The translations under genes and the position numbers were made by a program. A stretch of DNA of 64,000 bases. It comes from Macrostomum lignano. Lineage: Eukaryota. The first letter of the stretch is position 1. Each line of letters starts with the position of its first letter. The notes under the pieces were generated by a model. The model saw only the letters and a program-made list of their open reading frames with translations, was not told where the DNA came from and made no database searches. The stretch is from assembly GCA_002269645.1 (NCBI GenBank), contig NIVC01000361.1, positions 62,001 to 126,000 of the forward strand, given 5' to 3'. Of this stretch, positions 1,719 to 54,148 are shown piece after piece.

Positions 1719-1750
<32 letters not shown>

Positions 1751-1838: not shown

Positions 1839-1870
<32 letters not shown>

Positions 1871-2246: not shown

Positions 2247-2286
<40 letters not shown>

Positions 2287-4290: not shown

Positions 4291-4302
4291 TTTCGGCCCT
4301 AC

Positions 4303-5877
4303 CTGATAAGGCGCCCCGGCGGGCACGAAGACGGTGTCGCCCTGGAACTGCACAATCACGGCGGGGCGCAGGCCGCACTTGAGTCTGAGCCGGTCCAGCT
4401 CCGCAGGTCCCACGTAGGTGCCCGTCTGCTCCGCCAGCGGGTTGCCGCCGCCATTTTCGGCGCCGGCAGCCAGGAAGCGGCGCAGTTTGGCGGCGTCGGC
4501 AGGCCGGAAGACGTGCCAGAGGGCGCCGGGCAGACGGGAGTCCACGGCGATGGAGCGCAGGACGCCGGGGTCAACGCTGGCCCGCTCCAGTGCGGCGAAG
4601 GCGGCGGCCTTCTGCTGCTCCAGCGCGTCCTCCGGAGCGGCCACGTGGGCCAGCAGCACGGCCAGGTCGGCTGGCTGGCAGTGCAGCGCGAATGTGCCGG
4701 CAGTCTCGGTGCGCGACATGCCGTAGGCGCAGGTGAGCCGGGGAGGCGCGCAGCCGGCCGCCAGGTTGCAGCGGCCGCCGGCTCCGGTGTACTCGGCAAA
4801 CGGCACAGCCTTGGCGAGCTCGGACAGCGGCAGGCTGAACGGCTGGCCGGCGGGCGGGCGGAGCCGCAGCGAAAGCGGGTCGCCTGTGGCGGGGTTCTTC
4901 AGCCGGCGCTTCATGCTGTCGAAGCCGTCCCAGAAGTGGCGGGTGGGGCTGGCGGGCAGCTCGGTGCCGGCGTCGCAGTTCAGCACGCTGCATCGGCAGC
5001 CGGTCAGGCCGCGGCTCAGACTGCGCGGATGCCACCAGGCGTCGGCAGCAGCGGCGGCAGCGGCTGGCAGGCAGTTGGCCACCACAACTGGGAGGCCGCG
5101 GCGCCAGTGCCGCTGGAAGGCCAAGCAGCCGGGGCCGTCGGCCTGGCGCGGCGGCTCAGAGAAGCGCAGGATGAGGCTCCGGTTGTACGCGGCCTCCGCG
5201 TCTGGGTCTGCCGGGCTGTCGGCGGCTACTGGCGGCGGCGGCGGCGGCGGCGACTCCGGCGGGGAGAGCGGCGGCACGCGGAGGCTGGCAACGGCGGAGG
5301 CGAGGCGGGCGAAGGCGTCCCCAGGGACGTTGGTGGCCAGCAGCAGGCGGTCGGGCTCGTGCGCCTGCCGACCGACCGTGCAGTCGCCTGCGGCTGCCAC
5401 GCCGCCGCCTGGACGAAGCCGCGTCGCTGGCCGGTCGGAGGAGGAGGCGGCAGCGGCTGCTGCGGCGGCGGCTGGGTCGGAGAGGCGGCAGTCGGGCAGA
5501 GGGCGTAGCCGCACTTGCCGCAGCAGAAGTAGGCGCCGAACAGCGTTGAGTCGCACTGGTCGCAGGCTGTACCGCAGTTGCCCCGTCCGACGCCGCCGAC
5601 GTCTCGACGGCGCCAAAGCGACGCGGCGTTCGTGCCATCGCCCCCGGCTCCGCCGTAGCGGGCGCGCAGCTGGCGCTCCTGGCTGGCGAGTTCCTGGAAG
5701 GCTTCGCCGACAAAACTCAGCAGCCGTCGGGCCTCCGAGGCGACGACGCCAGGGGCGGCGGCTGCGGCGGCTCCGTTTGGCGGCTTGCGCAGCCAGGCGG
5801 CCAGGTCCTCGGGCTCGGCCTCGGTTGACTCGCAGAAGCCGCAGGCGGTCAAGCCGCCTTTCTTGTTGTAGCGCAGC
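4303..5877 (-). CDS. KDM3: KDM3-like coding exon 5 (zinc finger + most of JmjC); 1-nt frameshift at ~5494-5496
   Basis: CDQCDSTLFGAYFCCGKCGYALC/PDC zinc finger; FQRHWRRGLPVVV, FWDGF, GALWHVF, VQFQGDTVFVPAGAPYQ are KDM3 JmjC hallmarks; acceptor 5879-5878, donor 4302. Homology switches frame at TGC-CC-GAC. Confidence 0.92.
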
Positions 5878-5933
5878 CTGCGGTGCAAGATGGCGGAGAG
5901 ATTGGATTCTGGGCTGCCAGATTGGATGTCAGG

Positions 5934-17600: not shown

Positions 17601-18260
17601 ATATAGGGATTTATATTGATAAGTCAGATGGCTGGGTTACAATAGAACTGAGTGCAATAGTCCCAGGAAATTGTAAATACAAACTTCACTCAAATTGATC
17701 GCATGGAAGTGTGATGAGCACCTAAGCGAAATAATAATCACTAAGGAAACTGACTAAACTTGTGCACCAGAAGCTCTGCACCTGGGACGCATATACAAAG
17801 GATCTTCCCTTACCCTGAACAGTTTCAGGCATTGACTCAATAGTTGTTTCTGAGCATAGCAGAGCAATTATGCGTGCTATTTGTGCTTAGAATAACTGCC
17901 TCAAGAACTGATTGTGTGCGTTTATTTTCAATTTTTTTCTCACAAAATACCGTTTGGCGCCTTGGGGAATGGAAGCGAAAATCTTTTTACTTTATCTGTT
18001 TTGTTTAATCACCAGCTCAATTATCGCATCTGGCTTGGCTCTCTGTCTATAGCCTGTGATTAAAGGAAACTGCTCGAAAATACGGGAGATAAACCAATTA
18101 CAGGGAAGCAGCTGGTGCACTGACAAAAGAATGTGCGGCTGGAATAATCATCTGTTCAATTAGTCTCGTGCAGCTGTGCTGTAAAACTGCAACAATATTG
18201 CTTTTTAAAAACCACGGTTTCTGAGGATCCTTGTGGGACTAAAAGTAGCTGGTGAACATT

Positions 18261-19160
18261 AGGGGTAGCTGTGGGGACAGGAGGGGTAGCTGTGGGGACA
18301 GGAGGGGTAGCTGTGGGGACAGGAGGGGTAGCTGTGGGGACAGGAGGGGTAGCTGTGGGGACAGGAGGGGTAGCTGTGGGGACAGGAGGGGTAGCTGTGG
18401 GGACAGGAGGGGTAGCTGTGGGGACAGGAGGGGTAGCTGTGGGGACAGGAGGGGTAGCTGTGGGGACAGGAGGGGTAGCTGTGGGGACAGGAGGGGTAGC
18501 TGTGGGGACAGGAGGGGTAGCTGTGGGGACAGGAGGGGTAGCTGTGGGGACAAGAGGGGTAGCTGTGGGGACAGGAGGGGTAGCTGTGGGGACAGGAGGG
18601 GTAGCTGTGGGGACAGGAGGGGTAGCTGTGGGGACACGAGGGGTAGCTGTGGGGACAGGAGGGGTAGCTGTGGGACAGGAGGGGTAGCTGTGGGGACAGG
18701 AGGGGTAGCTGTGGGGACAGGAGGGGTAGCTGTGGGGACAGGAGGGGTAGCTGTGGGGACACGAGGGGTAGCTGTGGGGACAGGAGGGGTAGCTGTGGGG
18801 ACAGGAGGGGTAGCTGTGGGGACAGGAGGGGTAGCTGTGGGGACAGGAGGGGTAGCTGTGGGGACAGGAGGGGTAGCTGTGGGGACAAGAGGGGTAGCTG
18901 TGGGGACAGGAGGGGTAGCTGTGGGGACAGGAGGGGTAGCTGTGGGGACAAGAGGGGTAGCTGTGGGGACAGGAGGGGTAGCTGTGGGGACAGGAGGGGT
19001 AGCTGTGGGGACAGGATGGGTAGCTGGGTGGACAGGAGGGGTAGCAGTGGAAAGGAGGGGTAGCTCGGTGGACAGGAGGGGTAGCTGTGAGGACAAGAGG
19101 GGTAGCTGGTGGACAGGAGGGGTAGCTGTGAGGACAAGAGGGGTAGCTGGTGGACAGTGC
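18261..19160. repeat. 21-bp G-rich minisatellite abutting exon 2 donor
   Basis: Unit GGGGTAGCTGTGGGGACAGGA. Confidence 0.96.
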
Positions 19161-19178
19161 AATAGGCAGTAAACTCAC

Positions 19179-19188
19179 CCCTTTCATC

Positions 19189-19227
<39 letters not shown>

Positions 19228-19459
19228 TCCTGCTGCATCCGTCTGAGCCAAGCCTTCTTCAGTCCCACAGCCGGAGTAGCAGCAACGCAACCCGCAGTGG
19301 CGGGAGCGGACGGCGGCGGACTGCCAGACGGTCCGGGCGTCCCAGCGCTGGCGATTGACCCAGTCGGAGAAGATGTCGAATTGCTAGGTGTAGAACTCTG
19401 CTGAGTTTTCTGCTGGAGCTGTGGCTGCGGCTGGGGCTGGGGCGGCTGCTGTTGCTGCT

Positions 19460-19493
<34 letters not shown>

Positions 19494-20385
19494 CTGTTGC
19501 TGTTGCTGTTGCTCCTGTTTTTGCTTCTGCTGCTGCTGCAACTGCTGTTGCTGCAGCTGCTGCTGTTGCTGCAGCTGCTGCTGTTTCTGATGCTGATGCT
19601 GCTGTTGTTGTGGAGGCGGTGGCGGTAGCGGCGGTGGCGGCGGCGGTGGTGGCGGCTGTTGAATGACAGGCGGTTGCCGAGGCAGCGGCGGAGTGGCTCC
19701 AGCAGCGGGCAAAGAGTTCGGCGTTGCTGGATTAATCGGCCGAGCTTCCTGCGTGAAGGAGGCCGCTCTGCTGCGCGACCGTTGCTGATGGTGATACGAT
19801 AAAGGCGGGAGCGGCAGCGGCGGCAGTGGCGGAGGCAGCGGCTGGTGCTGCTGATGCTGACTACTGCGAGGCATGGGAACGTGTGGGGCTTGCGGCTGCG
19901 GGATCAGGTGACGGCGCAATGGAGCGGCTGCGGCGGCTGCAGCGGCGGCAGCGGAATTGATCCCGCCAATCGATGACATTTGCTGCTGTTGTTGCTGGGG
20001 CTGGGGCTGCTGCTGCTGCTGTTGCTGGCGTTGAAGCTGTTGATGAGCCTGATAGTGCAGCAGGCTGTGCTGGTGCTGCCTGTTCATCTTGTCGATGCTG
20101 AGCTGGAAATGCTGCTCAACTAAGTCGCTGGTTTGATCAGCCACCGCCGCCGCCGCTGCCGCTGCTGACGTTGCTGGCGTCAATGGCGGCGGGGGAGGCG
20201 GCGGGGGAGGCGGCTGCTGCTGTGTCGGTACAGGCAGTGGCACTTGGCCAGATGCTGTGGCGGCGGCTGCGGCTGCGGCAGCGGCGGCGACTGCTGCGGA
20301 GGGTCCACTGTTGCTGCTGCCGCGTGGCGGCGTCTTGCGGCTGCTGCTGCTGCTGCGAGGCTTCGCATCATCGTGCCTGTACATC
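19179..20385 (-). CDS. KDM3: KDM3-like coding exon 2 (poly-Q/P/A low-complexity)
   Basis: CAG acceptor 20387-20386, GTGAGT donor 19178; phases match both neighbouring exons. Confidence 0.78.
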
Positions 20386-22412
20386 CTGGTGAATTGAGGA
20401 TGTGGGCAATTCTTATTCAAACATAAGAAGTTAGAATTAGCCATGACAACCCAAAACTGTCTTGGTCATGTCACAGAAGTATACCATACTATGGATATGG
20501 ACAGATAATAGCTATTGGTAATAAGTGAAGCGAATTGGGGATACTAATCGCTTCCGTTTCTCGGGGATTTATCACCCTTCTCTCTGTGGTTTTATATTTG
20601 ATTCGTTATTTTAGTCTCAGTGTCGTAAAACTACTCGCATATATTAGCGCCTCCCAGTTGTGGAAATAGATCGTAGTCTAAAAAAGCAGACAAGCGAAGC
20701 CATAATGCTGTTGAAGTGAAATCGGGCTCTCGGACAGAAGACGGTGATAAATCATTAGACGGACGGGAGGAAAGGAAGTGGACAGCTTGGAGCGGTCAAG
20801 GCGTCTTGTCCAGATCCAACCCATGTAATGTCACTGCGCAGATGACAAATTTGCGATAATGTTTTGAATATTCGTTATCTTTCATTTCGTATTCATAGTA
20901 ATAGTAAAGCGGTAGGAAATGGTTAGTTAGCATTTGTCCTTCATTGCTATTTAAGAGTGCGCGCGCGAGCAGCAAAACAAATTTTAAACAGAATATATAA
21001 AGTTCCTAACAAACCAACCCTCAACCGGCGCTGTCAAAAGGCCCAACTGAAGACCTGCCGACCGACAAAAATCGCTAATAGAACAAAGACCAACTGGAGT
21101 AAGGCTCAGACTGCTGGCGCCACAACAATCTAAGCCTCTTTATTTTTACGATCTACTAGCGTATATATGATAAATTCTTCTTATATGATAGTATGCAGTA
21201 AAATATTGAGAAGATACGCATCAGTTCAATTCATAGCAGATGTGAAGGCAGGCGGGCTTGATAATAATTAATAATATATATTTACAAACTCTGCACACAG
21301 TGCGCCACGGTTGAACCCCCCAAGGGTACAAGCAATAAAACTTTAGACCCCACCAAGGCATGACATTGGTGTTTTTAACTATTTAGTAAGTTGTGCGTCA
21401 AAGCGGAAAGCACGAGAGACGAGAGGCACACGAGGCCTGCGAGGGAGAGAGAGAGAAGGGGCAATCTAAAGGCCTGGCGGCACAAGGAAGGTCGGAATGC
21501 AATGTATGTGCAATGTTCAACCGTGTACACACAAGTCCGCTCACTTGAGTTTATCTTAACCTATTATTATACGGACTAGATAATATATTCGTTCAACTTT
21601 TATTAAATCGTCAATCAAATTTAAACTTAAAAGGTTGCAACAAATTCCAGCGTTTTGAGAGCTAGTTTAGATAAAAGGAGGGGGGAGCTGGGAGAGGAAT
21701 CTAGAGCAGCGATGCACTTAAAGTTCAAGCGTGCGCGTTAGCTTAAGAAATTGAAAAACACCGCCGGGCGCCGCTTATGTTATACACGAGCTATTATTAG
21801 TGTAGCTTAAATAATTGGATTTGATAAGCTCTTTCCCACCATTGGCTTGACTTGCGGGCCCATTCAACTTATTACTTAGATAAGCGAACAGCCCCAGATT
21901 CACTAGCCTCACTCCCGCCTGTAAATTTCACCAAGCCGAAGATTTTTTAATAGATTAGCCTATTCTGCGCAGTTCTCGCTGGCAAAAATTAAACTTTGAC
22001 CTTTCCCCAAGTGCAGTTTAGCCTATTATTTAGCCTATACCCCAGGGCCCAAGGCAGGCAAGAGTATTCTAATTATCAGAAGCTATAAAATATTTCATTA
22101 AATTGAAGTCACCTTTATGGCTTTATTTGTTTGTTGATAAACGCAGTCGCACGTTCATTATGAAATAAATAATTAATTAACTCCATGTGTACGTTCGATT
22201 GGATGGAAATTTTACTAAAAAACAGCATACGTGCAAGTACACGTAAACACATAATATGCGGACATTATTGGAGGAGTGGAGGACCAAAAACCTTAAAAGG
22301 ACAAAGTGTTGGTTAAAAGGCTGGCTGAGTCTAGCCTAGGATAGAAGTATTCCCTCATTCAAGGTAAATGTTCAGGCCTCAGAGCAGAGCAGTATAAAAA
22401 AGTCGCACTCAC

Positions 22413-23113
22413 CGTTCCATTTGGCTCTGATTTCTGCACAATTCATCCTGATACTGCAGCAGCATCCAGAAGGGCGGCGGAGGCACATCCGGATGCATGT
22501 GCTCCCACATTGATTTCAAATTGCTGTAGTGCGGCTCTTTGGCCGCCGCTGCTGCCGCCGCTGCCGCCGCCTGCGGAAATGCGGCAGCCTGCTGCATTAC
22601 CTGGCACATCTGAGCATGCGCCTGCATTCGCTGGTACTCTTGCTGCAGTCTTTGTTGATGCATCTGTTGTTGCTGCTGTTGAGCCTGTTGTTGCTGTTGT
22701 TGTTGCTGTTGTTGAAGTGCCAGTAGATGCGCGTGGTGCTGTTGATATAACAGCATCTGCTCAGCGTCCGCTTTGCTCATTGACGCCAATGACCCTCCTG
22801 AAGTTGTCGCTGGATACTTCGGAATGGCGTGACCATTTCCGCCGTATATTGAACTTATTAAATAGTTTTTCTCACTAGATGGTAGACTCTGCTGTTGCCG
22901 CTGATGATGATGGCTGCTGCGGCTGTGCTGATGCTGTTGTTGCTGCTGGTGCTGCTGCAACTGCTGCTGCTGATACTGCTGATGATGCTGAGCTAGTTGA
23001 GCAGCAGCTGCAGCGGCCGCCGCAGCTGCAGCAGCCTGGCTATGATTCTGCTGCTGTGCCATCAGCGAGGCTTGCGAAGCACCACTGCTGCTGCTCATTA
23101 GCTTCTTGTGCAT
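22413..23113 (-). CDS. KDM3: KDM3/JMJD1-like protein, coding exon 1 (poly-Q/A/H low-complexity)
   Basis: Pyrimidine tract+AG acceptor at 23127-23126, ATG at 23113, GTGAGT donor at 22412; phase 2 joins exon 2 as QME-R-MYR. The frame is open upstream of the ATG (KAPE), so a further upstream coding exon is possible. Confidence 0.75.
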
Positions 23114-26109
23114 TTCAGGAGCTTTCTACAGGAAAACTGAATGAGGTAAAATTCAAACAGCCAATATATAGGTGTACAATTATATTGGCTTGGACTGGAG
23201 GGTAAGCTCGTTCTTTATTAAGACCGAAGTCTGTCTGTCTGGGTTCCTTTCTGTTAGTCTAAGTGCGTTCCAATTCCGTTCCGACTGAGTGACACATACA
23301 CAGAGATCGGGTCAGAAAGTTCTATTTATATTGGGGGTAGTGCTGCACTTGCCTTGGTTTTTGAACACGAGAGGCGGGGTGAGACAACTGGGCTTATCTT
23401 GCCATATACACAGACGGGGCACGCATTATTATTAAAGCGAAATTTCAAGTCCAGCCGGTTATACTGAAGGGTATTATTATTATGGCAGCCAACCCCCGGG
23501 CGGCCAACCTCATTCCCCGCTAAACCTTTTTAGAGAGTGCAACGCAGGATTGGCCCGCCAAGGGGGGGGGGCGGAGTTGGGGCGGGGTTGTGCAACGTGT
23601 AACGAAAACGGAGTTGGGGTGGTGGGGGCTGGCTTGGACTGCAGAGGCCAGTGGTTTAGTTGGTTGGTTCAGTTATAAAAGACTGAAGAAGCAAGGAAGG
23701 CCCAATAGCAGATCAGTGGCAAATTTTGCATACTCTGCTTTAACAAGCCCGTTATTGGCCTCTTCAATTGAATATTGTCTACCTGTCTTGCCCGGCTCAT
23801 CAATCATCATGATCCGTCGCCTTTAGCTAGCTAGCAAGCTTAGCTCTTCATCTTCACCTCTTCACAAGCTTGCATCTGTCATTTACCGAGATTGAATTAG
23901 AAATTTGAAAGCTTCTTGAAGTCACATCTGATTATTACAATTTATTTCTTGTCGTTAATTAATAGAAAATTCATTTTTTTGAGAAAACGAATTTCTAAAA
24001 TAATAGCTAAAGCCGACAGACACGGTGGAAAATGTAATTTTAAAAAGTGGATTTTTAATTGCATTAAAATTTACTATTTAAGCCCTTGTATCCAGGAAAA
24101 CTAGGATTAGCGGGAAAATCGCCCCCTTTGCGCGCTCATTTTGTAATTAAAATTTGAGTCTCAGTCAGTAGTCACTCACTGCGGACTCACTGCAACTATA
24201 CTGCACCGTGTCCGTGTAACAGAAAGCCTTCTTTTGATTAATTTCCATTTCCAACTAGGGTGGGGCTCAGCAACCAAAAACAAGGTCGCAAGCGCATAAA
24301 GCGCACAAGAAAATCTGCCTAAGCAGCAATAGCGGCACATTGTTCTGTTGTTTGCATTGGCTTTTATTTAGCACAAGTACAGTCGAGCCCAGTGTGACTG
24401 CTGGGTGGAAATCGGAATGCATGCGATAAATATATTACTTTTTGTACTTTGCCCTTCGCTCTTAACATTCATTAACTAAGACTAATAAATGTGACCATTT
24501 TATAGGTTGCTGATAGCAAATAACTAATCAGTATGTTTAAAATTTAACTTGCCTATCTATAAACAAACAAGGCTTATATCCAGATAGAAAAATACGGGGT
24601 TATTTCACTTTCTATTTTGTACTGTGTAGCACACACATCAAGCTATGTACACCCAGACAACACAACTGTTGATAAGATAAGGGGGCTTGGCTTAGCCTTA
24701 GGGCGTTGGGGCTTGGTTAGAAAGATAATATAGCACTACTGGAATTTGGAGAGTAAAATAGCGTGCTGAACATGTGGGGTGGAACGCGCTGGGGTGCTTC
24801 GGAAGGCCTGGCCTGAACCTCACCAACCCCCCCGCCCCAGTGCATACAAAAGGTCAAAGAATGCCCAAGAATTGCGCAGCTAAGCAAAAAAACTTATGCA
24901 TGGCAATATTAGGCATGAAGTGGTGGATAAAAAGTCCTACTTATACAACTAATGTGAAAGGTCATTCCACGCTTACCAAAAAGTAAAACAGGCTTTATAG
25001 CTGATTCGGAAAGGCACTGCTGCACTTTAGCAGCTTAATATCTCCTCCCCCATGCTAGGCGCAGCTGCACATCTGACATCTCCGATACCAACAACCGTGG
25101 CAAAAGAACATGGCGCACTAGCAACAGGAAATAAATTTATAAATTTTCTTTTGCGAAGCAAACAGCTTGGATGGAACATAAAAGGTGAAGGCTGCTAATA
25201 TTACGTTAAAATATTTATAGTACATCAAAATCTGATATTCATAGGCAAAGAGAAAGAGAAAATTATTATCAACGGCTTCGATTTATGAATATTATTTGTA
25301 GAAATTGATACTATTGGATATTAGACAGGCCTAGAAGCCTCCGTCGGCTCGAGAGAAGTCAAAGTACATTATATATCTTATATGTATCCATATTATAGAT
25401 AAGCCAGAGATCGATGCATCGGAATAAGAGACTTTTATCAGCTGCTAGTTGATTGCAAATCGATCCCAAGGGAATATTTGGTTAGGGGTAGAGCATAGAG
25501 GAATGGAATCTGAATTTATAAGCATAGAATTAGTCTATCAAATATCCATCCATCAATATACGAGTACTATAGACGCGTGCTCAAGTTTCAGCACTCTTGA
25601 AAAGTATATACATATATATATTACGAGCGTAGATGCGACATAAATTTCTACGTTTCGTACAATTTCGGTAACCCGGATTTATATATTGTAATGTAAACGA
25701 TATGTACTCGTATACCTTTCGCATAAGCAAGGCAGCGCAGAGTTAAAACCAAGAGAGAGGAAGAGATGGAGATTCTATATTGATAAGAATGATTTGGAGA
25801 ATAAAAATTCTGAAAAAGTGTGCATGGGAAGTTGGAATTGGAAACCGTAACAGAAATATGTTGACTCATATAAAAGTACAAAGCTTCCATTTATTTGAGC
25901 TACTCAAATAGTAATGTTATATCGGGTCGGGCGGTTTGCTCAAACTACGAGTACTTTCTGGCGAATGTCGTAGAGAATGCTTTGAAAAATCCTCCAATCT
26001 TCACATTCCAAAAGTCGTTCGAAATCGGTTGGGGGTTCCGAAGAGTGCCTGGCATGCGTAATACTCGAAAAATTGGGGGGGGGGGGTGAAGAAGCCTAGG
26101 GTGGAAAAA

Positions 26110-27430
26110 GTTAATAAAATTTGGGAATGTGAAGAAGCTTGGAGTTGCAAATAGTGCCTGTATAATAAAATCGGGGGAATGTAAAGAAGCTTGGGGGTTG
26201 AAAATAGTCCCTGTGTAATAAAATCGGGGGAATGTGAAGAAGCTTAGAGTTGCAAATAGTCCCTGTATAATAAAATCGGGGGAATGTGAAGAAGCTTAGA
26301 GTTGCAAATAGTCTCTGTGTAATAAAATCGGGGGAATGTAAAGAAGCTTGGGGGTTGAAAATAGTCCCTGTGTAATAAAATCGGGGGGAATGTGAAGAAG
26401 CTTGGAGTTGCAAATAGTGCCTGTATAATAAAATCGGGGGAATGTAAAGAAGCTTGGGGGTTGAAAATAGTCCCTGTGTAATAAAATCGGGGGAATGTGA
26501 AGAAGCTTAGAGTTGCAAATAGTCCCTGTATAATAAAATCGGGGGAATGTGAAGAAGCTTGGAGTTGCAAATAGTGCCTGTATAATAAAATCGGGGGAAT
26601 GTAAAGAAGCTTGGGGGTTGAAAATAGTCCCTGTGTAATAAAATCGGGGGAATGTGAAGAAGCTTAGAGTTGCAAATAGTCTCTGTGTAATAAAATCGGG
26701 GGAATGTAAAGAAGCTTGGGGGTTGAAAATAGTCCCTGTGTAATAAAATCGGGGGAATGTGAAGAAGCTTAGAGTTGCAAATAGTGCCTGTATAATAAAA
26801 TCGGGGGAATGTAAAGAAGCTTGGGGGTTGAAAATAATCCCTGTATAATAAAATCGGGGGAATGTAAAGAAGCTTGGGGGTTGAAAATAGTCTCTGTGTA
26901 ATAAAATCGGGGGAATGTAAAGAAGCTTGGGGGTTGAAAATAGTCCCTGTGTAATAAAATCGGGGGAATGTGAAGAAGCTTAGAGTTGCAAATAGTGCCT
27001 GTATAATAAAATCGGGGGAATGTAAAGAAGCTTGGGGGTTGAAAATAGTCCCTGTGTAATAAAATCGGGGGAATGTGAAGAAGCTTAGAGTTGCAAATAG
27101 TGCCCGTATAATAAAATCGGGGGAATGTAAAGAAGCTTGGGGGTTGAAAATAATCCCTGTATAATAAAATCGGGGGAATGTAAAGAAGCTTGGGGGTTGA
27201 AAATAGTCCCTGTGTAATAAAATCGGGGGGAATGTGAAGAAGCTTGGGGGTTGAAAATAGTCCCTGTATAATAAAATCGGGGGAATGTAAAGAAGCTTGG
27301 GGGTTGAAAATAGTCTCTGTATAATAAAATCGGGGGAATGTGAAGAAGCTTGGGGGTTGAAAATAGTCCCTGTATAATAAAATCGGGGGAATGTGAAGAA
27401 GCTTGGGTTGAAAATAGTCCCTGTGTAATA
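26110..27430. repeat. 52/53-bp minisatellite with 105-bp dimer structure
   Basis: Alternating GTGAAGAAGCTT(A/G)GAGTTGC.. and GTAAAGAAGCTTGGGGGTTG.. units. Confidence 0.94.
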
Positions 27431-27617
27431 AATTACATGCACCTGGCTATGCTTCAAAAAGGAAAAATTCCTCCCAAAGTTATGTAAGTAGGAAAATTCG
27501 ACCTCAAATTGCAGAACTGGTCGAAGACTGAGAAGAAAGTCAAAGCTTATCATACAAGGGTGGCTAATTCAAGCAGCTCGAATTATCAGGATGTTAGAAT
27601 AGCCTGCACGTTGACGA

Positions 27618-27656
27618 CAAGGACTACTTAAGTATACGTTACTTTAGTCGTCCTTG
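27618..27656. mobile_element. 39-bp excision footprint of the same P-like family
   Basis: CAAGGACTACTTAAGTA + TACGT + TACTTTAGTCGTCCTTG flanked by exact 8-bp TSD GTTGACGA; each 17-mer has one mismatch to the MITE terminus. Confidence 0.85.
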
Positions 27657-28479
27657 GTTGACGACTTGTCTAAGCTCAACCTTGCAATTGTTTCTATAGC
27701 ATTTGGCGGGCAAAATTGCATGTAACATTAGCTGTTCTTTGAGCTTGCTCATCCCCCCCCCCAGAAGATGGGGAGTGAGGCGTTGGTTCATGCAGTGTTT
27801 TCCTTCTTTACCTCCGTATATTGTTAAAAATAGAATATTATTACAACACACAATGCCGACTGAGCATCAATGCATGAGGAGAGATTGTGATTATGAGCAG
27901 ATAATGAAGGAGACTGCTGCATGCTTCAATGAGAATTTACCTATTCAATCAATGTGTTAATGCAGATTAGCATAACTTCCAATAATAATATTACTAACCA
28001 TATATTCCCTTCCAATCAATAGAATCTAAGCCATAAAAAACGACAACAAAGGCTTTTTGATTAATTCTTTATTCTATAGTCACACCAAGAATGGTAAATA
28101 ATGTATAGAGTAAAAATTAATATACAATATGGGCATTGAATTCATTGCTCATTGCATGCTGCTATTGTTGTGCAGACGCAATTGCACTGCTGTTAGATGC
28201 TGGGATTCAATAGGATTTGAGTGCGTTCTCTCGCGCAGTCACATTTTCAACTCGTATTGCTGGGCTATACATTTTATTACTATACATATAGAATGCAATC
28301 GGTCCGAAGTGATGCGGGAAATGCCATCCCTGGGTGCAAATCAATCAACGACTGGATGAGAGTGAGGGGAATGCAGTTGAATTGAGATGAGAGAACACAC
28401 AGATTTGAGGGCATAAAACTGCGAAGGGAAGATAGGCGTCACGTCACAGCTGGTAGGAAGGGCCGGGGCATTAGAAACA

Positions 28480-29679: not shown

Positions 29680-30870
29680 AATTTCTCATTCCTCTCAGAA
29701 TATCACTGTTTATCTTTCATTTCTCTGAGAATCTCACTGTTTATCTCCCATTTCTCTCAGAATCTCACGGTTATCTTCCATATCTCTCAGAATCTCACTA
29801 TTTATCTCCCATTTCTCTCAGAACCTCACTGTTTATCTTTCATTTCTCTGAGAATCTCACTGTTTATCTCCCATTTCTCTCAGAATCTCACGGTTATCTT
29901 CCATATCTCTCAGAATCTCACTATTTATCTCCCATTTCTCTCAGAACCTCACTGTTTATCTCGAATTTCTCTCAGAATCTCACTGTTTATCTCCCATTTC
30001 TCTCAGAATCTCACTGTTTATCTTCCATGTCTCTCAGAATCTCACTGTTTATCTTGCATTTCTCTCAGAATCTCATTGTTTATCTTCCATGTCTCTCAGA
30101 ATCTCACTGTTTATCTCGCATTTCTCTCAGAATCTCATTGTTTATCTTCCATGTCTCTCAGAATCTCACTGTTTATCTCCCATTTCTCTCAGAATCTCAT
30201 TGTTTATCTTCCATGTCTCTCAGAATCTCACTGTTTATCTTGTATTTCTCTCAGAATCTCATTGTTTATCTTCCATTTCTCTCAGAATCTCACTGTTTAT
30301 CTCGCATTTCTCTCAGAATCTCATTGTTTATCTTCCATTTCTCTCAGAATCTCACTGTTTATCTCGCATTTCTCTCAGAATCTCATTGTTTATCTTCCAT
30401 GTCTCTCAGAATCTCACTGTTTATCTCGCATTTCTCTCAGAATCTCATTGTTTATCTTCCGTCTCTGTTTATCTCCCGTTTCTTTCAGAATCCCACTGTT
30501 TATCTCGCATTTCTCTCAGAATCTCACTGTTTATCTTCCATGTCTCTCAGAATCTCACTGTTTATCTCGCATTTCTCTCAGAATCTCATTGTTTATCTTC
30601 CATGTCTCTCAGAATCTCACTGTTTATCTCACATTTCTCTCAGAATCTCATTGTTTATCTTCCATGTCTCTCAGAATCTCACTGTTTATCTCGCATTTCT
30701 CTCAGAATCTCATTGTTTATCTTCCATTTCTCTCAGAATCTCACTGTTTATCTCGCATTTCTCTCAGAATCTCATTGTTTATCTTCCATGTCTCTCAGAA
30801 TCTCACTGTTTATCTCGCATTTCTCTCAGAATCTCACTGTTTATCTTCCATGTCTCTCAGAATCTCACTT
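29680..30870. repeat. 31-bp minisatellite
   Basis: Unit TCTCTCAGAATCTCACTGTTTATCTCGCATT. Confidence 0.95.
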
Positions 30871-31439
30871 ATTTATCTCAATTGGAGTTCCATCAAAAGC
30901 TCAGCCATTCTACCTTAATTACCCGAACTTTTGGCATCAAACTCCCTTCGCTCATGCTACAGCAAGTTTTCCATGGTCTTATTTTTCGGAAGCTCAGGCA
31001 GTCTGGCTTCAATTATGCAGCTGTTCCTCGGAGTGGCACGCACAATGCACGCCAATACTATATTTATAATACATTTATTTACATGACTGTTTTTTTATAT
31101 TGAAATGCATTGTTTCTCACCGCCGTGTTGTTTCCTGGGGTCGCGCGAGTCGCATTACAGTCGCAATAATAATGTTTTGAGCACAGCAGAGAGATTAAAT
31201 CCGCCACCCCAGCCAAGAAATGTAATGCTCTATGCAATGCTCTAACTGACAATGGCGCAGATTAGGCAGAGAAAAATTCCAAATTCTTTGATTAGAACCC
31301 TGGATTGGGAAAGCTTGAAGAAAATAGAACACGACAGAATGTACTTTTAGTTCTAAACTGTTTTGCCAACTGAATAACTAATAATTTGCGTGTGATATTT
31401 TGTTTAAAAAAGGTGCAGGAGATCGCGAATGCCGATAAA

Positions 31440-33110: not shown

Positions 33111-33834
33111 GGATGTAAAAAATCGCCACAAGAGATGCGCCGGCAGAGCGCGGCAGGGCAATCCAGCCTCCTCCACCGTAACTGCATTGCCGCACTCACT
33201 GCCCAGTTGCAAAACAAAAGAAGAGAAGAAAAACAAAAAAGTTTGGAGAGGGTAGCTATAGTATAGCGTGCAAAACAGACTAGATAGATAGCATATTCAC
33301 ATAAAAATAAATAAAGAAGGCCCCGTCTATTGAGATGAACTGCAGTAAAAGTTTGAAAATTTGAAATTGGCATCTGACTAGAAGCTATAGCTATAAATCG
33401 CTTGAAACCGTTCGAAATGCGGAATATAGTTATTTTCTCATCATGTCGGCGCAGATGGACGGACGGACGGACGGGCGGTTGGAGCAATTTTGAATTTTTC
33501 GCTCTATAGATCGAGCCGCCGGGCCTTTAAAGCTGACTGACTAGCTGGGTTTCCAGGGAAAATGACCGGAAATACTAAAATGGAAAATTTTGCAATTTTC
33601 GGATGCATGCTTGTGCAGCAGTATTTGGGTATTAAGGATAGCATAAAGCCGGCTGCAGACTATTTCTATGCGGAATTGGTTTGAACTATTGCCCAAGAAT
33701 GTACAACTTTTATTGGGACTGGGAAATCGAATTTCCGCTTTCAGAATTCGAGATCAAGGATGGGTCGTTTGCAATCCAGGATACATCTTGAACGTAATGT
33801 CTTGGGCATTCCGTTTGAAGGCTTAAGATTCAGT

Positions 33835-34690
33835 GTTGGGATTTTAGGAATCGGGATTTCAGGGTTTGAGATTTCAGGGTTTGGGATTTCAGGCTTTGAG
33901 ATTTCAGGGTTTGGGATTTCAGGCTTTGAGATTTCAGGGTTTGGGATTTCAGGCTTTACAATTTCAGCTTTTGAGATTTCAGGGTTTGAGATTTCAGGGT
34001 TTGGGATTTTCGGGTTCGGGGTTTCAGGGTTTGGGATTTCAGGCTTTAAGATTTCAGGGTTTGGGATTTCAGGGTTTGGGATTTCAGGGTTTGATATTTC
34101 AGGCTTTGGGATTTCAGGCCTTGGGATTTCAGGCTTTGGTATTTCAGGCTTCAAGATTTCAGGGTTTGGGATTTCAGGCTTTGAGATTTCAGGGTTTGGG
34201 ATTTCAGGCTTTAAGATTTCAGGGTTTGGGATTTCAGGCTTTGAGATTTCAGGGTTTGGGATTTCAGGCTTTGAGATTTCAGAGTTTGGGATTTCAGGCT
34301 TTAAGATTTCAGGGTTTGGGATTTCAGGCTTTGAGATTTCAGGGTTTGGGATTTCAGGCTTTAAGATTTCAGGGTTTGGGATTTTCGGGTTTCGAATTTC
34401 AGGCTTTGGGATTTCAGGCCTTGGGATTTCAGGCTTTGGTATTTCAGGCTTCAAGATCTCAGGGTTTGAGATTTCAGGGTTTGGGATTTTCGGGTTTGGA
34501 ATTTCAGGCTTTGGGATTTCAGGCTTTGGGATTTCAGGCTTTGGGATTTCAGGCTTTGGGATTTCAGCCTTCAAGATTTCAGGGTTTGAGATTTCAGGGT
34601 TTGAGATTTCAGGGTTTAAGATTTCAGGGTTTGGGAATTCAGGAAGTTTGGGATTTTAGGAATCGGGATTTCAGGGTTTGGGATTTTAGG
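33835..34690. repeat. 15-bp G/T-rich minisatellite
   Basis: Unit ATTTCAGG(G/C)TTTG(G/A)G. Confidence 0.95.
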
Positions 34691-35524
34691 GTTTTGGTAG
34701 TTTCATTTTTTCGGGAATGTTCTGATGATTTATAATTCAAATGCGCCATCGGGTCCTTAAAAAATTCACTATAGCAATCAAGGAATTGATGTTACTTCTC
34801 AGCCCTCTTCTCTTCTTTCTCTTCTCTCGTCTTCTCTCCTTTATATCTCTCATCTTCTCTCTGATCTCATCTTCGCTTTCCTCTTCTCTGTCTCCTGTAT
34901 TCCCCTCTCCTCTACAGTTAAGCCGACTCCAGATTTAGATCAACGCACAATAGCTGGGGAGCAGGATGCAAACACAGCAGCATTAATCTGGAAACTGTAA
35001 AGCACAGATGGATGGCAGAAGTGCATTGGACAGGAATTTGGGCTAAGCTAACTAAGACCCTTGGACAGATACCCTCTCGCCTAAATGCGAGCCGGGCATT
35101 CCAGTCTGCACCCAGCCCGGTATCAATATTGCATTCCGCATATAGACTTTAGGCAAACAACCAATTCCTCATTTGGAAACCAAGCAAGGGGAAAAGCAAG
35201 CAAGCTGTGTCTTGTTGCACTTTTAGCGATCGGCCACAGTTGCTAGGCTGGGCTAGTCATACATTATAGAAGAAGGCCGACTGAGAGGGGGGTAGAGAGG
35301 GAAAGAGTGGAATTTGCACTGCAACAGCAGCCTTTCGGCACCCAAAAAGGCATTATATTATAACTTTTGTAGAAGACAAAATCCTCCATCCTTTTTAGGT
35401 TCCTAATTTAGCCCAATGCATTGAACTACTGGGCGGCTGCCCTCACACCAAATAGTTAAATAGGGGTCAAATGGGGATAGTGCAGATGCTGAAATGCCAA
35501 CCCTCATTTGGCCGTCCAATAATC

Positions 35525-36415
35525 ACCTCTGTCCAACAATCGCCCATTGGAAAATCGCTCCTGTCCAAGAATCGCCCATTGGAGAATTGCTTCTGTCCAA
35601 GAATCGCCCATTGGAGAATCGCTCCTGTCCAACAATCGCCCATTGGAGAATCGCTCCTGTCTAAGAATCGCCCATTGGAGAATCGCTTCTGTCCAAGAAT
35701 CGCCCATTGGAGAATCGCTCTTGTCCAAGAATCGCCCATTGGAGAATCGCTCCTGTCCAAGAATCGCCCATTGGAGAATCGCTCCTGTCCAAGAATCGCC
35801 CCTGCCAAGAATCGCCCATTGGAGAATCGCTCCTGTCCAAGAATCGCCCATTGGAGAATCGCTCCTGTCCAAGAATCGCTCCTGTCCAAGAATCGCCCAT
35901 TGGAGAATCGCTCCTGTCCAAGAATCGCCCATTGGAGAATCGCTCCTGTCCAAGAATCGCCCATTGGAGAATCGCCCCTGCCAAGAATCGCCCATTGGAG
36001 AATCGCTCCTGTCCAAGAATCGCCCCTGCCAAGAATCGCCCATTGGAGAATCGCCCCTGCCAAGAATCGCTCATTGGAGAATCGCTCCTGTCCAAGAATC
36101 GCCCCTGCCAAGAATCGCCCATTGGAGAATCGCTCCTGTCCAAGAATCGCCCATTGGAGAATCGCTTCTGTCCAACAATCGCCCATTGGAGAATCGCTTC
36201 TGTCCAAGAATCGCCCATTGGAGAATCGCTTCTGTCCAAGAATCGCCCATTGGAGAATCGCTTCTGTCCAAGAATGTCCAAGAATCGCCCATTGGAGAAT
36301 CGCTCCTATCCAAGAATCGCCCATTGGAAAAATCGCCCCTCTCTAAAAATCGTTCCTGTCCAAAATCGACCATTGGAGAATCGCCCACCCAAGAATCTCC
36401 TATTGGAAAAATCGC
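35525..36415. repeat. 32-bp (with 21-bp variant) minisatellite
   Basis: Unit AAGAATCGCCCATTGGAGAATCGCTCCTGTCC. Confidence 0.95.
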
Positions 36416-37451
36416 CCTTTGTTGTTTTCGAGCTAAAAATAGAAAAAAAATACAACTGGCAATATATTTTATAACCGAAATCCTGGGATAAGAACGTTGC
36501 ATGGTTTCATTCCATCTAATCTTATCTTTTTGAAGAAGAGTGAAAAGCGAAATTGAAATGATTATTTAGTGTAGAGAAAGCGGCGAATAAATCATCTACA
36601 AAAACTGAAGCACTTCACTAAATAAGCTGCAGCTTTGTCATGTCAATTTGTGGCAATTATTTTTAAAAAAAATGCATTGCCTATGCAGTGCTCAAGGGGC
36701 AGGGCAGATGGGATGGAAAAAGCAGATATGGCAAAGAAGATTAAGCCTTCTACTCATCCAGTCTGTTTATTGTAGACAGAAAGCAGACTGCAACAGCCTT
36801 TCATCTGCAGCCATCGCGGAGCCCTCCTCCCTCCCTCGAATCGGAATAAATGTATGTTTTTTCATCTGAAAACCAAAATTCCAATTTTAATCTGCAGGAA
36901 ATTCAATAAAATGCTGTCTGTCAGTTTTTTTTAATTAGATGATGAAAGCTCTCCATCATTGGGGGAGGCGGAGGAGTTGAAATAATGAAGAAAAATACGA
37001 GTATTCAATCGTATATACTACTTAGGCCCCTCCAAAGACCCAAATGAGTAGTGCAGTTCGAATATAGCAACTAAAAAAGAAACCAGCAATAAAAATAGCA
37101 AAACTCGGGCATTGATTTTCAATTTGATTTGATTGTAAAAATAGTCAACATTGCCTAGAAATGCGAAAGTTTAACTGCTGCGATACACAGTCTCGTAGAT
37201 CTGGGAGCCTAATATCTTAATATAAGTTGGAATTGTCAGATTCTCCATTCACTACTCTGATTACTCACTGAGAGTCTACAGCAAGTAAATAACAAGTTGA
37301 TGATGCAGTTTTCGATTTGGTGTACAGCTGAAATTTTTAAATAATACCCTAGCAACTGAGTTTGAGTTCATAGTCCTAACAAACGGGTTTGAGTTGATCA
37401 CCCTAGCAACCGGGTTTGAGTTCATCACTTGATTCCCAAGCCGGGGACCTG

Positions 37452-47950: not shown

Positions 47951-48233
47951 ATTACTTTCGGTGACTTTTTTATCACTCTCTTGTTTTGTGCTCACTCCCC
48001 TTTGTGTCTGGTCACTACCACTGGTTTCTGACGGTCACTCCCTTTGATTTCTGGTCTCCCGAGTAGCTTTCTGATTAAACCTGGTGCATTCTCAATATTC
48101 TTATCACTCTCCATGATCCTCACCCTGGAGTAGTTACTACCCACTAACGTCTATAGCAAATCGATGATTGTCACGCTCAATGATAGACTCCCCTCTGATA
48201 AAACGAATCAACATCGCTCTAGAAGTCACTCAC

Positions 48234-48628
48234 TCTCGCGTCATGCTGTCAATGAAAGCGCGCAACACATCGCGCCAAAGAATTGGAGCCCGTCTGGCCA
48301 ACTCAAGCATAGCCCTGGGCGCCCTGGCACTAACGGAACAGTCTAACGGGCTCTGGCCAAGGTTTCTAACTGTAGGATTGGCGCCCAGCTCAATCAAAGC
48401 GCGCACGGAGCCAGCCCGGTCCGATCTGGCGGCCAGGTGCAAGGCGGTTAGCGCAGACTGACTAGTGATCTCATCATTAACACCCAGCCGGCCGCTAGTA
48501 ACTAGATCGCGCATAGCATCGGCGTCCTCGTCTAGGACTGCCGTCTCCATTCGCCGTTTCGGATTGCTGTCCGAATTGGCAGACAAAAACTGCAGTAGAA
48601 CGCTGCCGCCGCCAGGCTGATTGGCCAT
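48234..48628 (-). CDS. Ankyrin-repeat/SOCS-box (ASB-like) protein exon 1: ankyrin repeats
   Basis: TALHLAARSDRAGSVRALIELGANPTVRN-GQSPLD is an ankyrin consensus; GTGAGT donor 48233, phase 2. Confidence 0.8.
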
Positions 48629-49029
48629 GTAATATGCTTTCTTTATTATTACTGCTCACCCAAACTAATTAACTATTGAGAACCGGTAAATACCAAAAGA
48701 CAGGTGAGCCCGGCATCAATAGAGAATATCGATTGGCTACTTTATATTAGATTTTACACAGCAGTAGGGAATGTCATTTAAATCATCCTAACTCAAGCTT
48801 ATTACATACTGGCATAGTACAGGTGAATAAGGTTACTTGGAGGCGATGCGTCCCACCCCAAATGAAACATAACGAGGCCAACAGACTCTGAAATGATAGG
48901 GATTTATATTTTAACGGCCTTAATGACTCCAATAAACAGTGGCGCCAACCAAGGGACAGACACCAGCCTGTTTCTGATATACAGCTGTAGGGGCACTAAC
49001 CAACTGGTGCCCAACCAATAACATGGGAG

Positions 49030-51594: not shown

Positions 51595-51894
51595 CTGTGG
51601 GAACGATGATGAATGCACTGAGTAAGTAGCAGTCAAGCAATTGAGAAAATCAACAGACATGGATAAGAGGGGCTACCCCCCCCCCTGACCACATACTAAG
51701 TACACTAGCCAGTGTACTCAACCCATGGATGAATAAAACCATATTTAGCAAAACTATAACTACTCTCTGTTCGGTAGTAAGAGCGTAAAAGCAACATTAG
51801 ATTATTCAAATGGAATTACTAGCTCCACTAGTGTATTTTGATCCACTACCAGACTTGGCCATAGATAAAAGAATTGAAAGCAGCAGTTGGCAGC

Positions 51895-52592
51895 CAAGGA
51901 CGACTTAAGTAGAAGGACGGGAAACCTCGTTTCTTAGAAAATTTTTGAAGGCACTTTTTCCCGAAAAAATACACTACGGAGATAGGAAATTTTTATTTTT
52001 TCAGCACAAAAAATGCTATTACTTTTGATAGGAGGCAGATCCAGTGCTCATCTTTTGATATGTTGTGCCTTTTTTATTGCTCTATCGATATTTATAAAGC
52101 TTTTAGTTCAGAAAATTAGGATTATATGTCAATTTTTTATTCTACGTACATTTCCTGTATCTGAAAATCACAAAAATGCATGACACAGCTCCAATATTTG
52201 CTTTTATGAACCTGTTTTATCATCTCTGTTACGAATATTTGCTAAACAGTCAGTTAAGAATGATAAAATAGACTTCTAAAACCAAAGAGCCGAGCCGTGG
52301 CATTCTAATGTATTTCAATCACAAGACACGTGAAAATATACGGAGAATAAAAAATTGACATAGAATCCTAATTTTCTGAACGAAAAGCTTTATAAATATC
52401 GATAGAGCAATAAAAAAGGCACAACATATCAAAAGATGAGCACTGGATCTGCCTCCTATCAAAAGTAATAGCATTTTTTGTGCTGAAAAAATAAAAATTT
52501 CCTATCTCCGTAGTGTATTTTTTCGGGAAAAAGTGCCTTCAAAAATTTTCTAAGAAACGAGGTTTCCCGTCCTTCTACTTAAGTCGTCCTTG
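51895..52592. mobile_element. 698-bp foldback MITE, P-element-superfamily-like
   Basis: ~259-bp near-perfect TIRs starting CAAGGACGACTTAAGTA, 180-bp spacer, exact 8-bp TSD TTGGCAGC (51887-51894, 52593-52600). CANRG ends with a 7-8-bp TSD are characteristic of the P superfamily. Confidence 0.85.
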
Positions 52593-52677
52593 TTGGCAGC
52601 GTGTGACAAGGAGTTCAAGGAGTTCTATAATTAGCATCTGGAGTGGAAGGACACTTAAAACACTTAACCAATCATAC

Positions 52678-53085: not shown

Positions 53086-53179
53086 CTGCGGTGTCAAATT
53101 AGGGCAAAATCGGTTCATCTCAACAGTCTCTGAGTTTTTATATTGTTAAAGCTTAAAATCTGTATGGTTTTGCTGTGTA

Positions 53180-54062: not shown

Positions 54063-54148
54063 TCCCACTTTTATGGTTAAAATCCGCACCCCCTTCATTT
54101 TATATCTCTAAACCCGCCTCTGGGAACATACTATAAACCATGGCTAAC

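What the first reader, a model, noticed from the sequence alone, without database searches (positions are those of the whole stretch)
27610..27664. P-element-type excision footprint: exactly 17 bp of each TIR retained inside an 8-bp TSD
Seen: GTTGACGA | CAAGGACTACTTAAGTA - TACGT - TACTTTAGTCGTCCTTG | GTTGACGA. Each 17-mer differs at only one base from a terminus of the 698-bp MITE at 51895-52592. Established: Drosophila P transposase makes a staggered cut 17 nt inside the TIR, so end-joining repair leaves ~15-18 bp of each end plus filler between 8-bp TSDs. Inference: a non-Drosophila P/THAP9-type transposase with the same 17-nt cleavage geometry has mobilised this family in this genome, probably fairly recently. 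A donor-site scar and an intact family member in one window give a natural record of the mechanism.
Basis: partly seen in the sequence, partly recalled or inferred. Interest (0 to 1): 0.85.

Follow-up and report, generated by a model that had tools for sequence, protein, structure and literature searches.

The report
Transposon excision scar, superfamily unresolved
A 55-base stretch is very probably the scar left when a small cut-and-paste transposon jumped out; it looks just like laboratory P-element excision scars, but the transposon has a copy of its own end motif exactly at the break point, which gives a second explanation.

Summary
At 27610-27664 there is GTTGACGA | 17 nt | TACGT | 17 nt (inverted) | GTTGACGA. 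Each 17-mer differs by one base from the termini of the 698-bp foldback MITE at 51895-52592, which has an 8-bp TSD (TTGGCAGC) and 259-nt arms. It is the only structure of this kind in the window (about 0.01 expected by chance).

It is very probably a donor-site scar of that family, about 0.8 over all transposase-made routes. Its anatomy matches published Drosophila P{wa} excision junctions: 8-bp TSD + 17 + a 2-12 nt insert + 17 + TSD.

The P/THAP9 assignment is not shown. The TIR repeats its terminal octamer exactly 17 nt inward: CAAGGACG at positions 1-8 and GAAGGACG at 18-25 (p about 8.5e-4 at that offset). A cut at this internal pseudo-end by any transposase would leave the same 17+17. The terminus CAAGG also fits the hAT consensus YARNG.

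No transposase of P, hAT or MULE type lies in the window. No other copy of the family could be found in any collection available here. 'Recent' is not supported (2 mismatches in 34 nt, no population data).

Rough weights: P-type 17-nt stagger 0.4, pseudo-end cut 0.3, transposase-independent deletion 0.15. This is a new member of a known kind and of modest interest.

The parts
27610..27617 (.). left copy of the 8-bp target-site duplication, GTTGACGA
27618..27634 (+). left TIR remnant, 17 nt, CAAGGACTACTTAAGTA (G8>T relative to the MITE terminus)
27635..27639 (.). 5-nt filler TACGT, not part of the TIR; GTA|TAC forms a 6-bp palindrome with the left remnant
   Evidence: compare with junction inserts in PMC2895639
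27640..27656 (-). right TIR remnant, 17 nt; its reverse complement is CAAGGACGACTAAAGTA (T12>A relative to the MITE terminus)
27657..27664 (.). right copy of the 8-bp target-site duplication, GTTGACGA
51887..51894 (.). left TSD of the intact MITE, TTGGCAGC
51895..52592 (.). intact 698-bp non-coding foldback MITE of the same family, in an intron of the mitochondrial HSP60 gene (- strand)
51895..52153 (+). left TIR arm, 259 nt; its first 208 nt pair perfectly with the right arm
52334..52592 (-). right TIR arm, 259 nt
51895..51902 (+). terminal octamer CAAGGACG (mirrored at 52585-52592 on the - strand)
51903..51910 (.). 8-bp palindrome ACTTAAGT at TIR positions 9-16 (also at 52577-52584)
51912..51919 (+). 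internal copy of the terminal octamer, GAAGGACG, at TIR positions 18-25 (mirrored at 52568-52575 on the - strand); it begins exactly where the scar's retained sequence stops
52593..52600 (.). right TSD of the intact MITE, TTGGCAGC

Best explanation
A member of the MITE family seen intact at 51895-52592 once inserted at GTTGACGA and made the 8-bp duplication. It was later cut out by its transposase. The two chromosomal ends each kept the outer 17 nt of a TIR and were joined by end joining, which added 5 nt (TACGT).

The cut geometry I think most likely is the P-element type. The 3' strand is cleaved at the element terminus and the 5' strand 17 nt inside the TIR. This leaves 17-nt 3' overhangs of TIR sequence on the donor flanks. 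The overhangs are then joined and filled in, probably by the polymerase-theta type of end joining.

Shown: the TSD, the two 17-nt remnants, the filler and the family relationship.

Inferred: that a transposase made the breaks, that the other strand was cut at the terminus (stagger) rather than also at 17|18, and that the enzyme belongs to the P/THAP9 superfamily.

The confidence given (0.4) is for the full statement including the P/THAP9-type stagger. That the site is a transposase-made excision scar of this family, by any route, I put at about 0.8.
For: - The anatomy is confirmed and is far from chance.
- Both arms stop at the same position, 17. Two unrelated deletion end points would not be expected to agree.
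- The filler rules out simple replication slippage and calls for joining of two broken ends.
- Published P{wa} excision junctions have the same form, for example acccagacCATGATGAAATAACATA-TGTA-TATGTTATTTCATCATGacccagac and ...ACATA-TATACCG-TATGTT.... The mean insert is 5.5 nt (PMC2895639).
- The 17-nt stagger is established for Drosophila P (PMC7776569).
- hAT, MULE and Transib cleave at the element end with hairpins on the flank, so their ordinary scars hold no TIR bases (PMC5499845).
- An 8-bp TSD and very long foldback TIRs both occur in the P superfamily: Galileo, and TSDs of 7-9 bp (PMC3698922).
- Both substitutions (position 8 on the left, position 12 on the right) lie inside the stretch that would have been single-stranded and filled in by an error-prone polymerase.
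Against: - There is one scar only.
- No P/THAP9 transposase, and no other transposase that makes 8-bp TSDs, is in the window. No further copies were found anywhere.
- The TIR repeats its terminal octamer at offset 17 (p about 8.5e-4 at that offset and 4% at any offset from 9 to 60). The 17|18 boundary therefore has a second, sequence-based explanation that needs no stagger.
- The terminus CAAGG fits the hAT consensus YARNG. The P termini quoted in the papers read here do not (CATGA; CATAC for Pdre2).
- hAT families are far commoner than P families in animals (my own knowledge).
- Outside Drosophila P, a 17-nt stagger has not been demonstrated on native ends in the papers I could read.
- The 8-nt palindrome in the overhangs would favour a 24-bp microhomology product, which is not what is seen.
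Confidence: 0.4

Rival explanations
1. Pseudo-end excision. The transposase, of any superfamily and with hAT the obvious candidate, used the internal copy of the terminal octamer (GAAGGACG, TIR positions 18-25) in both arms as if it were the element end. It excised positions 18-681. The outer 17 bp of each arm stayed behind as double-stranded flank, and an ordinary few-base end-joining scar (TACGT) was left between them.
For: - The internal octamer starts exactly at position 18, where the retained sequence stops. It occurs nowhere else in the element, and this is unlikely by chance.
- CAAGG fits hAT YARNG, and an 8-bp TSD is the hAT norm.
- GTA|TAC at the left junction looks like the palindromic nucleotides produced when a flank hairpin is opened, the hairpin mechanism of hAT and MULE elements (PMC5499845). 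Hairpin-type scars have also been described for Ac/Ds (PMC1978519).
- It needs no assumption that a distant enzyme shares Drosophila's 17-nt geometry.
Against: - The pseudo-end starts with G, not C, which breaks the Y of YARNG. Terminal bases are usually critical for cleavage.
- Both arms would have to be mis-cut in the same event.
- Such events should be rare next to normal excision.
- On the right junction the bases are not palindromic.
- Because the arms are inverted repeats, GTA|TAC can equally be a templated copy of the other arm's start, as seen in P junctions.
- That the pseudo-end offset equals Drosophila's 17 would be a coincidence of about 1 in 50.
Confidence: 0.3
2. Transposase-independent internal deletion of an inserted copy. 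This could be breakage or replication failure at the long hairpin-forming inverted repeat followed by end joining, or abortive gap repair, that happened to leave 17 nt on each side.
For: - The intact relative is an almost perfect 259-nt-arm palindrome (dG -321 kcal/mol as a single strand). Such structures are known to be unstable (my own knowledge).
- Internally deleted copies are the commonest fate of DNA transposons.
Against: - Two independent end points falling at the same position in both arms, and at the internal octamer, is not expected.
- Hairpin tips are cut at the centre and cruciforms at the base (position 0), not 17 nt in.
- There is no discontinuity at 17 in the stem.
- No direct repeat spans the junction, and 5 nt of filler are present, so slippage is excluded.
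Confidence: 0.15
3. The same long staggered-cut geometry, but made by a transposase of another, mechanistically uncharacterised superfamily that makes 8-bp TSDs (for example Merlin, Zisupton or Novosib) rather than P/THAP9.
For: - The scar constrains the geometry only, not the enzyme family.
- Several 8-bp-TSD superfamilies have no biochemistry (my own knowledge).
- No THAP or P-transposase sequence was found.
Against: - P is the only superfamily for which such a stagger is documented.
- These other superfamilies are rare.
Confidence: 0.1
4. A chance palindrome, or a functional hairpin unrelated to transposition.
For: The 55-mer folds as a hairpin better than shuffles (dG -10.4, z -3.4).
Against: - 16 of 17 identity of both arms to the termini of a bona fide TSD-flanked element.
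- A perfect 8-bp flanking direct repeat.
- Expectation about 0.01.
Confidence: 0.02

Closest known systems
End-joining junctions after Drosophila P-element (P{wa}) excision (Beall & Rio 1997 geometry; Chan, Yu & McVey 2010, PMC2895639)
   Same: An 8-bp TSD on both sides, up to 17 nt of each TIR retained, and a short non-templated or templated insert between them (mean 5.5 nt). Junctions of the form 17+4+17 and 17+7+17 are listed in their tables.
   Different: The TIR sequence is unrelated. The host is a non-insect animal (HSP60 is closest to molluscs and flatworms at 74-76%). No transposase is known. Drosophila P has no internal copy of its terminal motif at the cut site. There is one natural fixed example rather than a scored series.
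P-superfamily foldback elements and P-associated MITEs (Galileo, 1360, BuT5; PMC3698922)
   Same: Non-coding, TSD of 7-9 bp, and TIRs that can be very long. [quoted passage not shown]
   Different: There is no sequence similarity and the autonomous partner is unknown. Superfamily membership is untested.
hAT-superfamily MITEs and their excision scars (Ac/Ds, Hermes)
   Same: An 8-bp TSD, a terminus that fits 5'-YARNG (CAAGG), and a subterminal repeat of the terminal motif.
   Different: hAT excision leaves hairpins on the flank and no element bases. A 17+17 scar fits hAT only if internal pseudo-ends were cut. 259-nt TIRs are unusual for hAT.

Membership tests
P superfamily (P element/THAP9, Galileo, 1360) | Autonomous copy encodes a THAP domain plus an RNaseH-like transposase with a GTP-binding insertion | tested here: inconclusive
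   No such domain in any window ORF scanned against Pfam.
P superfamily (P element/THAP9, Galileo, 1360) | TSD of 7-9 bp (8 bp for P proper) | tested here: met
   Two independent insertions with perfect 8-bp TSDs, GTTGACGA and TTGGCAGC. This feature is shared with hAT.
P superfamily (P element/THAP9, Galileo, 1360) | Staggered donor cleavage 17 nt inside the TIR, so scars keep up to 17 nt of each end | tested here: inconclusive
   One scar with 17+17 matches laboratory junctions. The same boundary is also a pseudo-terminus, so the stagger itself is not shown.
P superfamily (P element/THAP9, Galileo, 1360) | GC-rich target preference with a 14-bp palindromic pattern | tested here: inconclusive
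   Only two target sites (50% and 62.5% GC). This is too few to judge.
hAT superfamily | 8-bp TSD | tested here: met
hAT superfamily | TIR terminus 5'-YARNG | tested here: met
   CAAGG at both ends of the MITE and of the scar. The consensus is recalled from my own knowledge, so this is a lead rather than proof.
hAT superfamily | Excision through hairpins on the flank, so scars carry no element bases | tested here: not met
   The scar keeps 17 nt of each TIR. This is compatible with hAT only under the pseudo-end model.
hAT superfamily | Transposase with BED/hAT dimerisation domains | tested here: inconclusive
   None in the window.
Mutator-like elements | TSD usually 9-11 bp; long TIRs; flank-hairpin excision that is mostly precise | tested here: not met
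   The TSD is 8 bp in both insertions and the scar retains TIR bases (PMC5499845). Only the long TIRs fit.
MITE / foldback non-autonomous DNA transposon | Short, non-coding, TIRs, TSD | tested here: met
   698 bp with 259-nt arms and an 8-bp TSD. The only ORFs are 56 aa or shorter, with no homologue.

The most novel reading that the evidence does not exclude
A P/THAP9-type transposase in a non-insect, probably spiralian, animal cuts its own ends with the same 17-nt stagger as Drosophila P. In this family the site of the inner cut is marked by a second copy of the terminal octamer. The window would then hold a natural record, scar plus intact copy, that this unusual geometry is conserved across phyla and may be specified by sequence.
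Probability: 0.35. Interest if true: 0.55.

Novelty: new member of a known kind. Interest (0 to 1): 0.35.

Why it matters
Excision scars are the only natural record of how a transposase cuts. P-type cleavage, a 17-nt stagger, has been mapped biochemically only for the Drosophila enzyme.

If this scar is of P type, it suggests the geometry is conserved in a distant animal lineage. It would also give a family in which that can be tested, with both a scar and an intact copy to hand.

If instead the internal octamer was used as an end, it is a clean natural example of pseudo-end excision. It would also warn against assigning a superfamily from the length of a single scar. Either way it is one small, non-coding relic with no evident effect on a gene.

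Tried and rejected
1. More family copies. TIR 22-mers (with IUPAC codes at the two variable positions) and an inner-TIR 22-mer were scanned against metagenome contigs, viral contigs and prokaryote genome contigs. All gave 0 hits.

2. Protein space as a proxy for DNA. Two ORFs inside the MITE were looked up by exact sequence and one by homology. Nothing was found.

3. Orthologous or allelic site. ORFs next to the scar and HSP60 exon 1 were looked up and are not on record. The ORF next to the scar is only a minisatellite reading frame.

4. Host identification. HSP60 searches gave at best 74-83% identity, so the species is not in the protein collection. Contigs of the two closest partial hits carry no taxon name.

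5. A paralogous empty site in the window: none.

6. Other 7-9-bp-TSD elements or scars in the window: none.

7. A transposase in the window: only a piggyBac-like fragment, which is irrelevant because that superfamily makes TTAA TSDs.

8. Literature search for the TIR string: primer coincidences only.

9. Origin of the filler. There are 5-6-nt matches to the flank (ACGTT) and to the MITE (TATACG, TACGTAC), but matches of that length are expected by chance, so no template is claimed.

10. The reading 'inner element (positions 17-682) inserted into a 24-bp palindrome with TSD ACTTAAGT' was rejected. It is a trivial consequence of a palindrome inside a TIR.

11. Two key P-element papers (PMC3779457 and PMC4399808) are not held.

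Full report
**1. The observation**

| Coordinates | Sequence | Part |
|---|---|---|
| 27610-27617 | GTTGACGA | left TSD |
| 27618-27634 | CAAGGACTACTTAAGTA | left TIR remnant |
| 27635-27639 | TACGT | filler |
| 27640-27656 | TACTTTAGTCGTCCTTG | right TIR remnant |
| 27657-27664 | GTTGACGA | right TSD |

- The reference element at 51895-52592 is 698 bp. It begins CAAGGACGACTTAAGTA, ends with the reverse complement of that, and is flanked by TTGGCAGC on both sides.
- Its arms are 259 nt and 98% complementary, with 180 nt between them. As a single strand, the first 208 nt pair without a mismatch.
- The 17-mer, allowing up to 3 mismatches, occurs only at these four places in 64 kb. The expectation is 0.11, and no shuffle reaches 4. 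blastn finds nothing more.
- A scan for any perfect 8-bp direct repeat enclosing an inverted repeat of at least 12 nt within 80 bp returns this site alone, against 0.01 per shuffled window.
- The inverted symmetry of the scar stops at 17 on its own evidence: the next pairs are T.T and A.G. The length therefore does not depend on which family member is used as the reference.
- The left remnant differs from the MITE terminus at position 8 (G>T) and the right remnant at position 12 (T>A).
The only caveat is that 17 is an upper bound for the retained length.

**2. Surroundings**

- The window is animal DNA. A mitochondrial HSP60 gene lies on the minus strand, with exons at about 55790-55080, 54484-54134, 53145-52675 and 51672-51247.
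- The intact MITE sits in the intron between the last two of these exons.
- The reconstructed HSP60 is at best 74-76% identical to mollusc and flatworm proteins. The species itself is therefore not in the protein collection.
- The scar lies in non-coding DNA. To its left is a minisatellite of about 52 bp period (26077-27432). The long ORF there is only a reading of that repeat.
- I scanned the longer, non-repetitive ORFs of at least 70 aa against Pfam. They gave HSP60 exons, an ankyrin fragment, a weak JmjC match and a piggyBac-like fragment (59450-59779, minus strand).
- No THAP, P-transposase, hAT or MULE domain was found.
- No other element with a 7-9-bp TSD is present, and there is no paralogous empty site.

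**3. What it is**

- The perfect 8-bp duplication shows that something inserted here.
- The two remnants show that it was a member of the MITE family.
- The 5 nt of filler, together with the absence of any direct repeat across the junction, shows that two broken ends were joined. This rules out a slippage deletion.
- Both breaks lie at the same place in the two arms, between TIR positions 17 and 18. Two unrelated deletion end points would not be expected to agree like this.
- Hairpin tips are cut at the centre and cruciforms at the base, so neither explains a break 17 nt in. The stem of the intact copy has no discontinuity at 17.
- I therefore take a transposase-made excision followed by end joining as very likely, about 0.8 over all transposase routes.

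**4. How it was cut: two explanations that both give exactly 17**

*(a) P-type stagger.*
- For Drosophila P, the 3' strand is cut at the terminus and the 5' strand 17 bp inside the 31-bp repeat (PMC7776569).
- The donor flanks are left with 17-nt 3' overhangs of TIR sequence. These are joined mostly by the alternative, polymerase-theta-dependent pathway (PMC2895639).
- The junction tables of that paper list products such as acccagacCATGATGAAATAACATA-TGTA-TATGTTATTTCATCATGacccagac and ...ACATA-TATACCG-TATGTT..., that is, TSD+17+insert+17+TSD. The mean insert is 5.5 nt. The window's scar has this same anatomy.
- hAT, Transib and MULE transposases cut at the element end and make hairpins on the flank (PMC5499845). 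Their normal scars therefore carry no element bases.
- Long foldback TIRs and TSDs of 7-9 bp occur in the P superfamily (PMC3698922).

*(b) Pseudo-end cut.*
Positions 1-8 are CAAGGACG and positions 18-25 are GAAGGACG.
- The heptamer AAGGACG occurs at positions 2-8 and 19-25 of both arms and nowhere else in the element.
- In shuffled arms, a match of at least 7 of 8 at offset 17 has p = 8.5e-4. A match at any offset from 9 to 60 has p = 4%.
- The boundary of the scar is therefore also the start of a second, internal 'end'.
- A transposase of any superfamily that used these internal ends in both arms would excise positions 18-681. It would leave the outer 17 bp as ordinary flank with a small end-joining scar between them.
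- The terminus CAAGG fits the hAT consensus YARNG (my own knowledge). An 8-bp TSD is the hAT norm, and hAT families are much commoner than P families in animals.
- GTA|TAC at the left junction resembles the palindromic bases left by hairpin opening. However, because the arms are inverted repeats, it can equally be a templated copy of the other arm's first bases, as in the P junctions.

*Weighing the two.*
- Each explanation carries one coincidence of about the same size. Under (a), the octamer happens to sit at the cut. Under (b), the pseudo-end happens to sit at Drosophila's number. These roughly cancel.
- Three points favour (a). Every end-joined P-type excision leaves a visible scar. Pseudo-end events should be rare. 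The pseudo-end also begins with G where the true end has C.
- Two points favour (b): the prior abundance of hAT, and the YARNG fit.
- My estimates:

| Explanation | Estimate |
|---|---|
| P/THAP9-type stagger | about 0.4 |
| Same staggered geometry by another superfamily | about 0.1 |
| Pseudo-end cut | about 0.3 |
| Transposase-independent deletion | about 0.15 |

- The two main models partly converge. In both, the inner break is at the second octamer. They differ only in where the other strand was cut, and a repaired scar cannot show that.

**5. Details that do not decide the matter**

- TIR positions 9-16 (ACTTAAGT) are a palindrome. Two 17-nt overhangs could anneal there to give a 24-bp scar, but that product is not what is seen.
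- In that alignment the 3'-terminal A of one overhang faces G8 of the other. This would produce the G8>T change seen in the left remnant.
- Both substitutions lie in the stretch that would have been filled in by a repair polymerase. This fits (a) but is not evidence for it, since the donor copy may simply have differed.
- Two substitutions in 34 nt, against 2% divergence between the arms of the intact copy, have a probability of about 0.15 under equal age. Nothing can be said about recency.

**6. Attempts to get decisive evidence**

The decisive tests are a census of short copies, the autonomous partner, and the orthologous site. All three need the rest of this genome.
- TIR patterns gave no match in metagenome, viral or prokaryote contig collections.
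- ORFs inside the MITE are not on record, either exactly or as homologues.
- ORFs near the scar and HSP60 exon 1 are not on record.
- The closest HSP60 contigs carry no taxon name.
- The literature holds the TIR string only as unrelated primers.
- The zebrafish THAP9 preprint shows excision of Pdre2 but does not map a 17-nt cut on its native ends. Whether the geometry is conserved outside Drosophila therefore seems open in what I could read.

**7. Comparison and verdict**

- The scar works like a P-element donor-site junction and is indistinguishable from one in form.
- Membership of the P superfamily is not established. The TSD criterion is met but is shared with hAT. The scar criterion is met once but is ambiguous. 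The transposase criterion could not be tested.
- hAT membership fails on scar type unless pseudo-ends were used. MULE fails on TSD length and scar type.
- The finding is real and neatly preserved, but it is a single small relic of a known kind of event. I rate it as a new member of a known kind, with interest about 0.35.
- The most novel reading still open is a conserved 17-nt stagger in a distant animal, possibly specified by a repeated end motif. I give it a probability of about 0.35 and it would merit about 0.55.

Noticed in passing
window 51247-55790 (- strand): Mitochondrial HSP60 (Cpn60) gene in at least four exons. The intact 698-bp MITE lies in the intron between the exons at 52675-53145 and 51247-51672. 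The best protein matches are only 74-76% (molluscs, flatworms), so the source species is absent from the protein collection.
   Followed up: partly
window 51895-52592: The two arms of the MITE pair perfectly for their first 208 nt, with all differences further in. This points to very recent formation, or to arm-to-arm correction, of this foldback copy.
   Followed up: no
window 59450-59779 (- strand), neighbouring ORFs 59125-59600: Fragment of a piggyBac-like transposase (Pfam DDE_Tnp_1_7, E = 1.6e-6), apparently broken across frames. It is unrelated to the 8-bp-TSD family.
   Followed up: no
window 26077-27432: Minisatellite of about 52-53 bp period, with roughly 25 copies at 91-95% identity. 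It ends 180 bp to the left of the scar, and its 348-aa 'ORF' is an artefact of the repeat.
   Followed up: partly
window 500-2500, 18200-19200, 30000-31100, 33700-34700, 35450-36500: Many further tandem-repeat arrays that are open in several frames on both strands. The first has an 8/12-nt period with about 200 overlapping copies. GC content and strand skews swing widely along the window (0.30-0.70).
   Followed up: no
window 18156-20444 (-) and 22409-23113 (-): ATG-initiated ORFs of 762 and 234 aa that are very rich in Gln, Ala and Pro, with no Pfam match. They may be exons of low-complexity nuclear proteins.
   Followed up: no
window 48233-48655 (-) and 3580-5928 (-): An ankyrin-repeat ORF (E about 8e-6), and a 783-aa open frame in 70% GC DNA with a weak, sub-threshold JmjC match (E = 1.6e-3).
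   Followed up: no
window 27610-27680 versus TIR positions 5-12: The target site plus its right flank (GTTGACGACTTGT) shares the 8-mer GACGACTT with the TIR (CAAGGACGACTTAAG). This is possibly chance, or possibly a hint of target preference or of microhomology at insertion.
   Followed up: no
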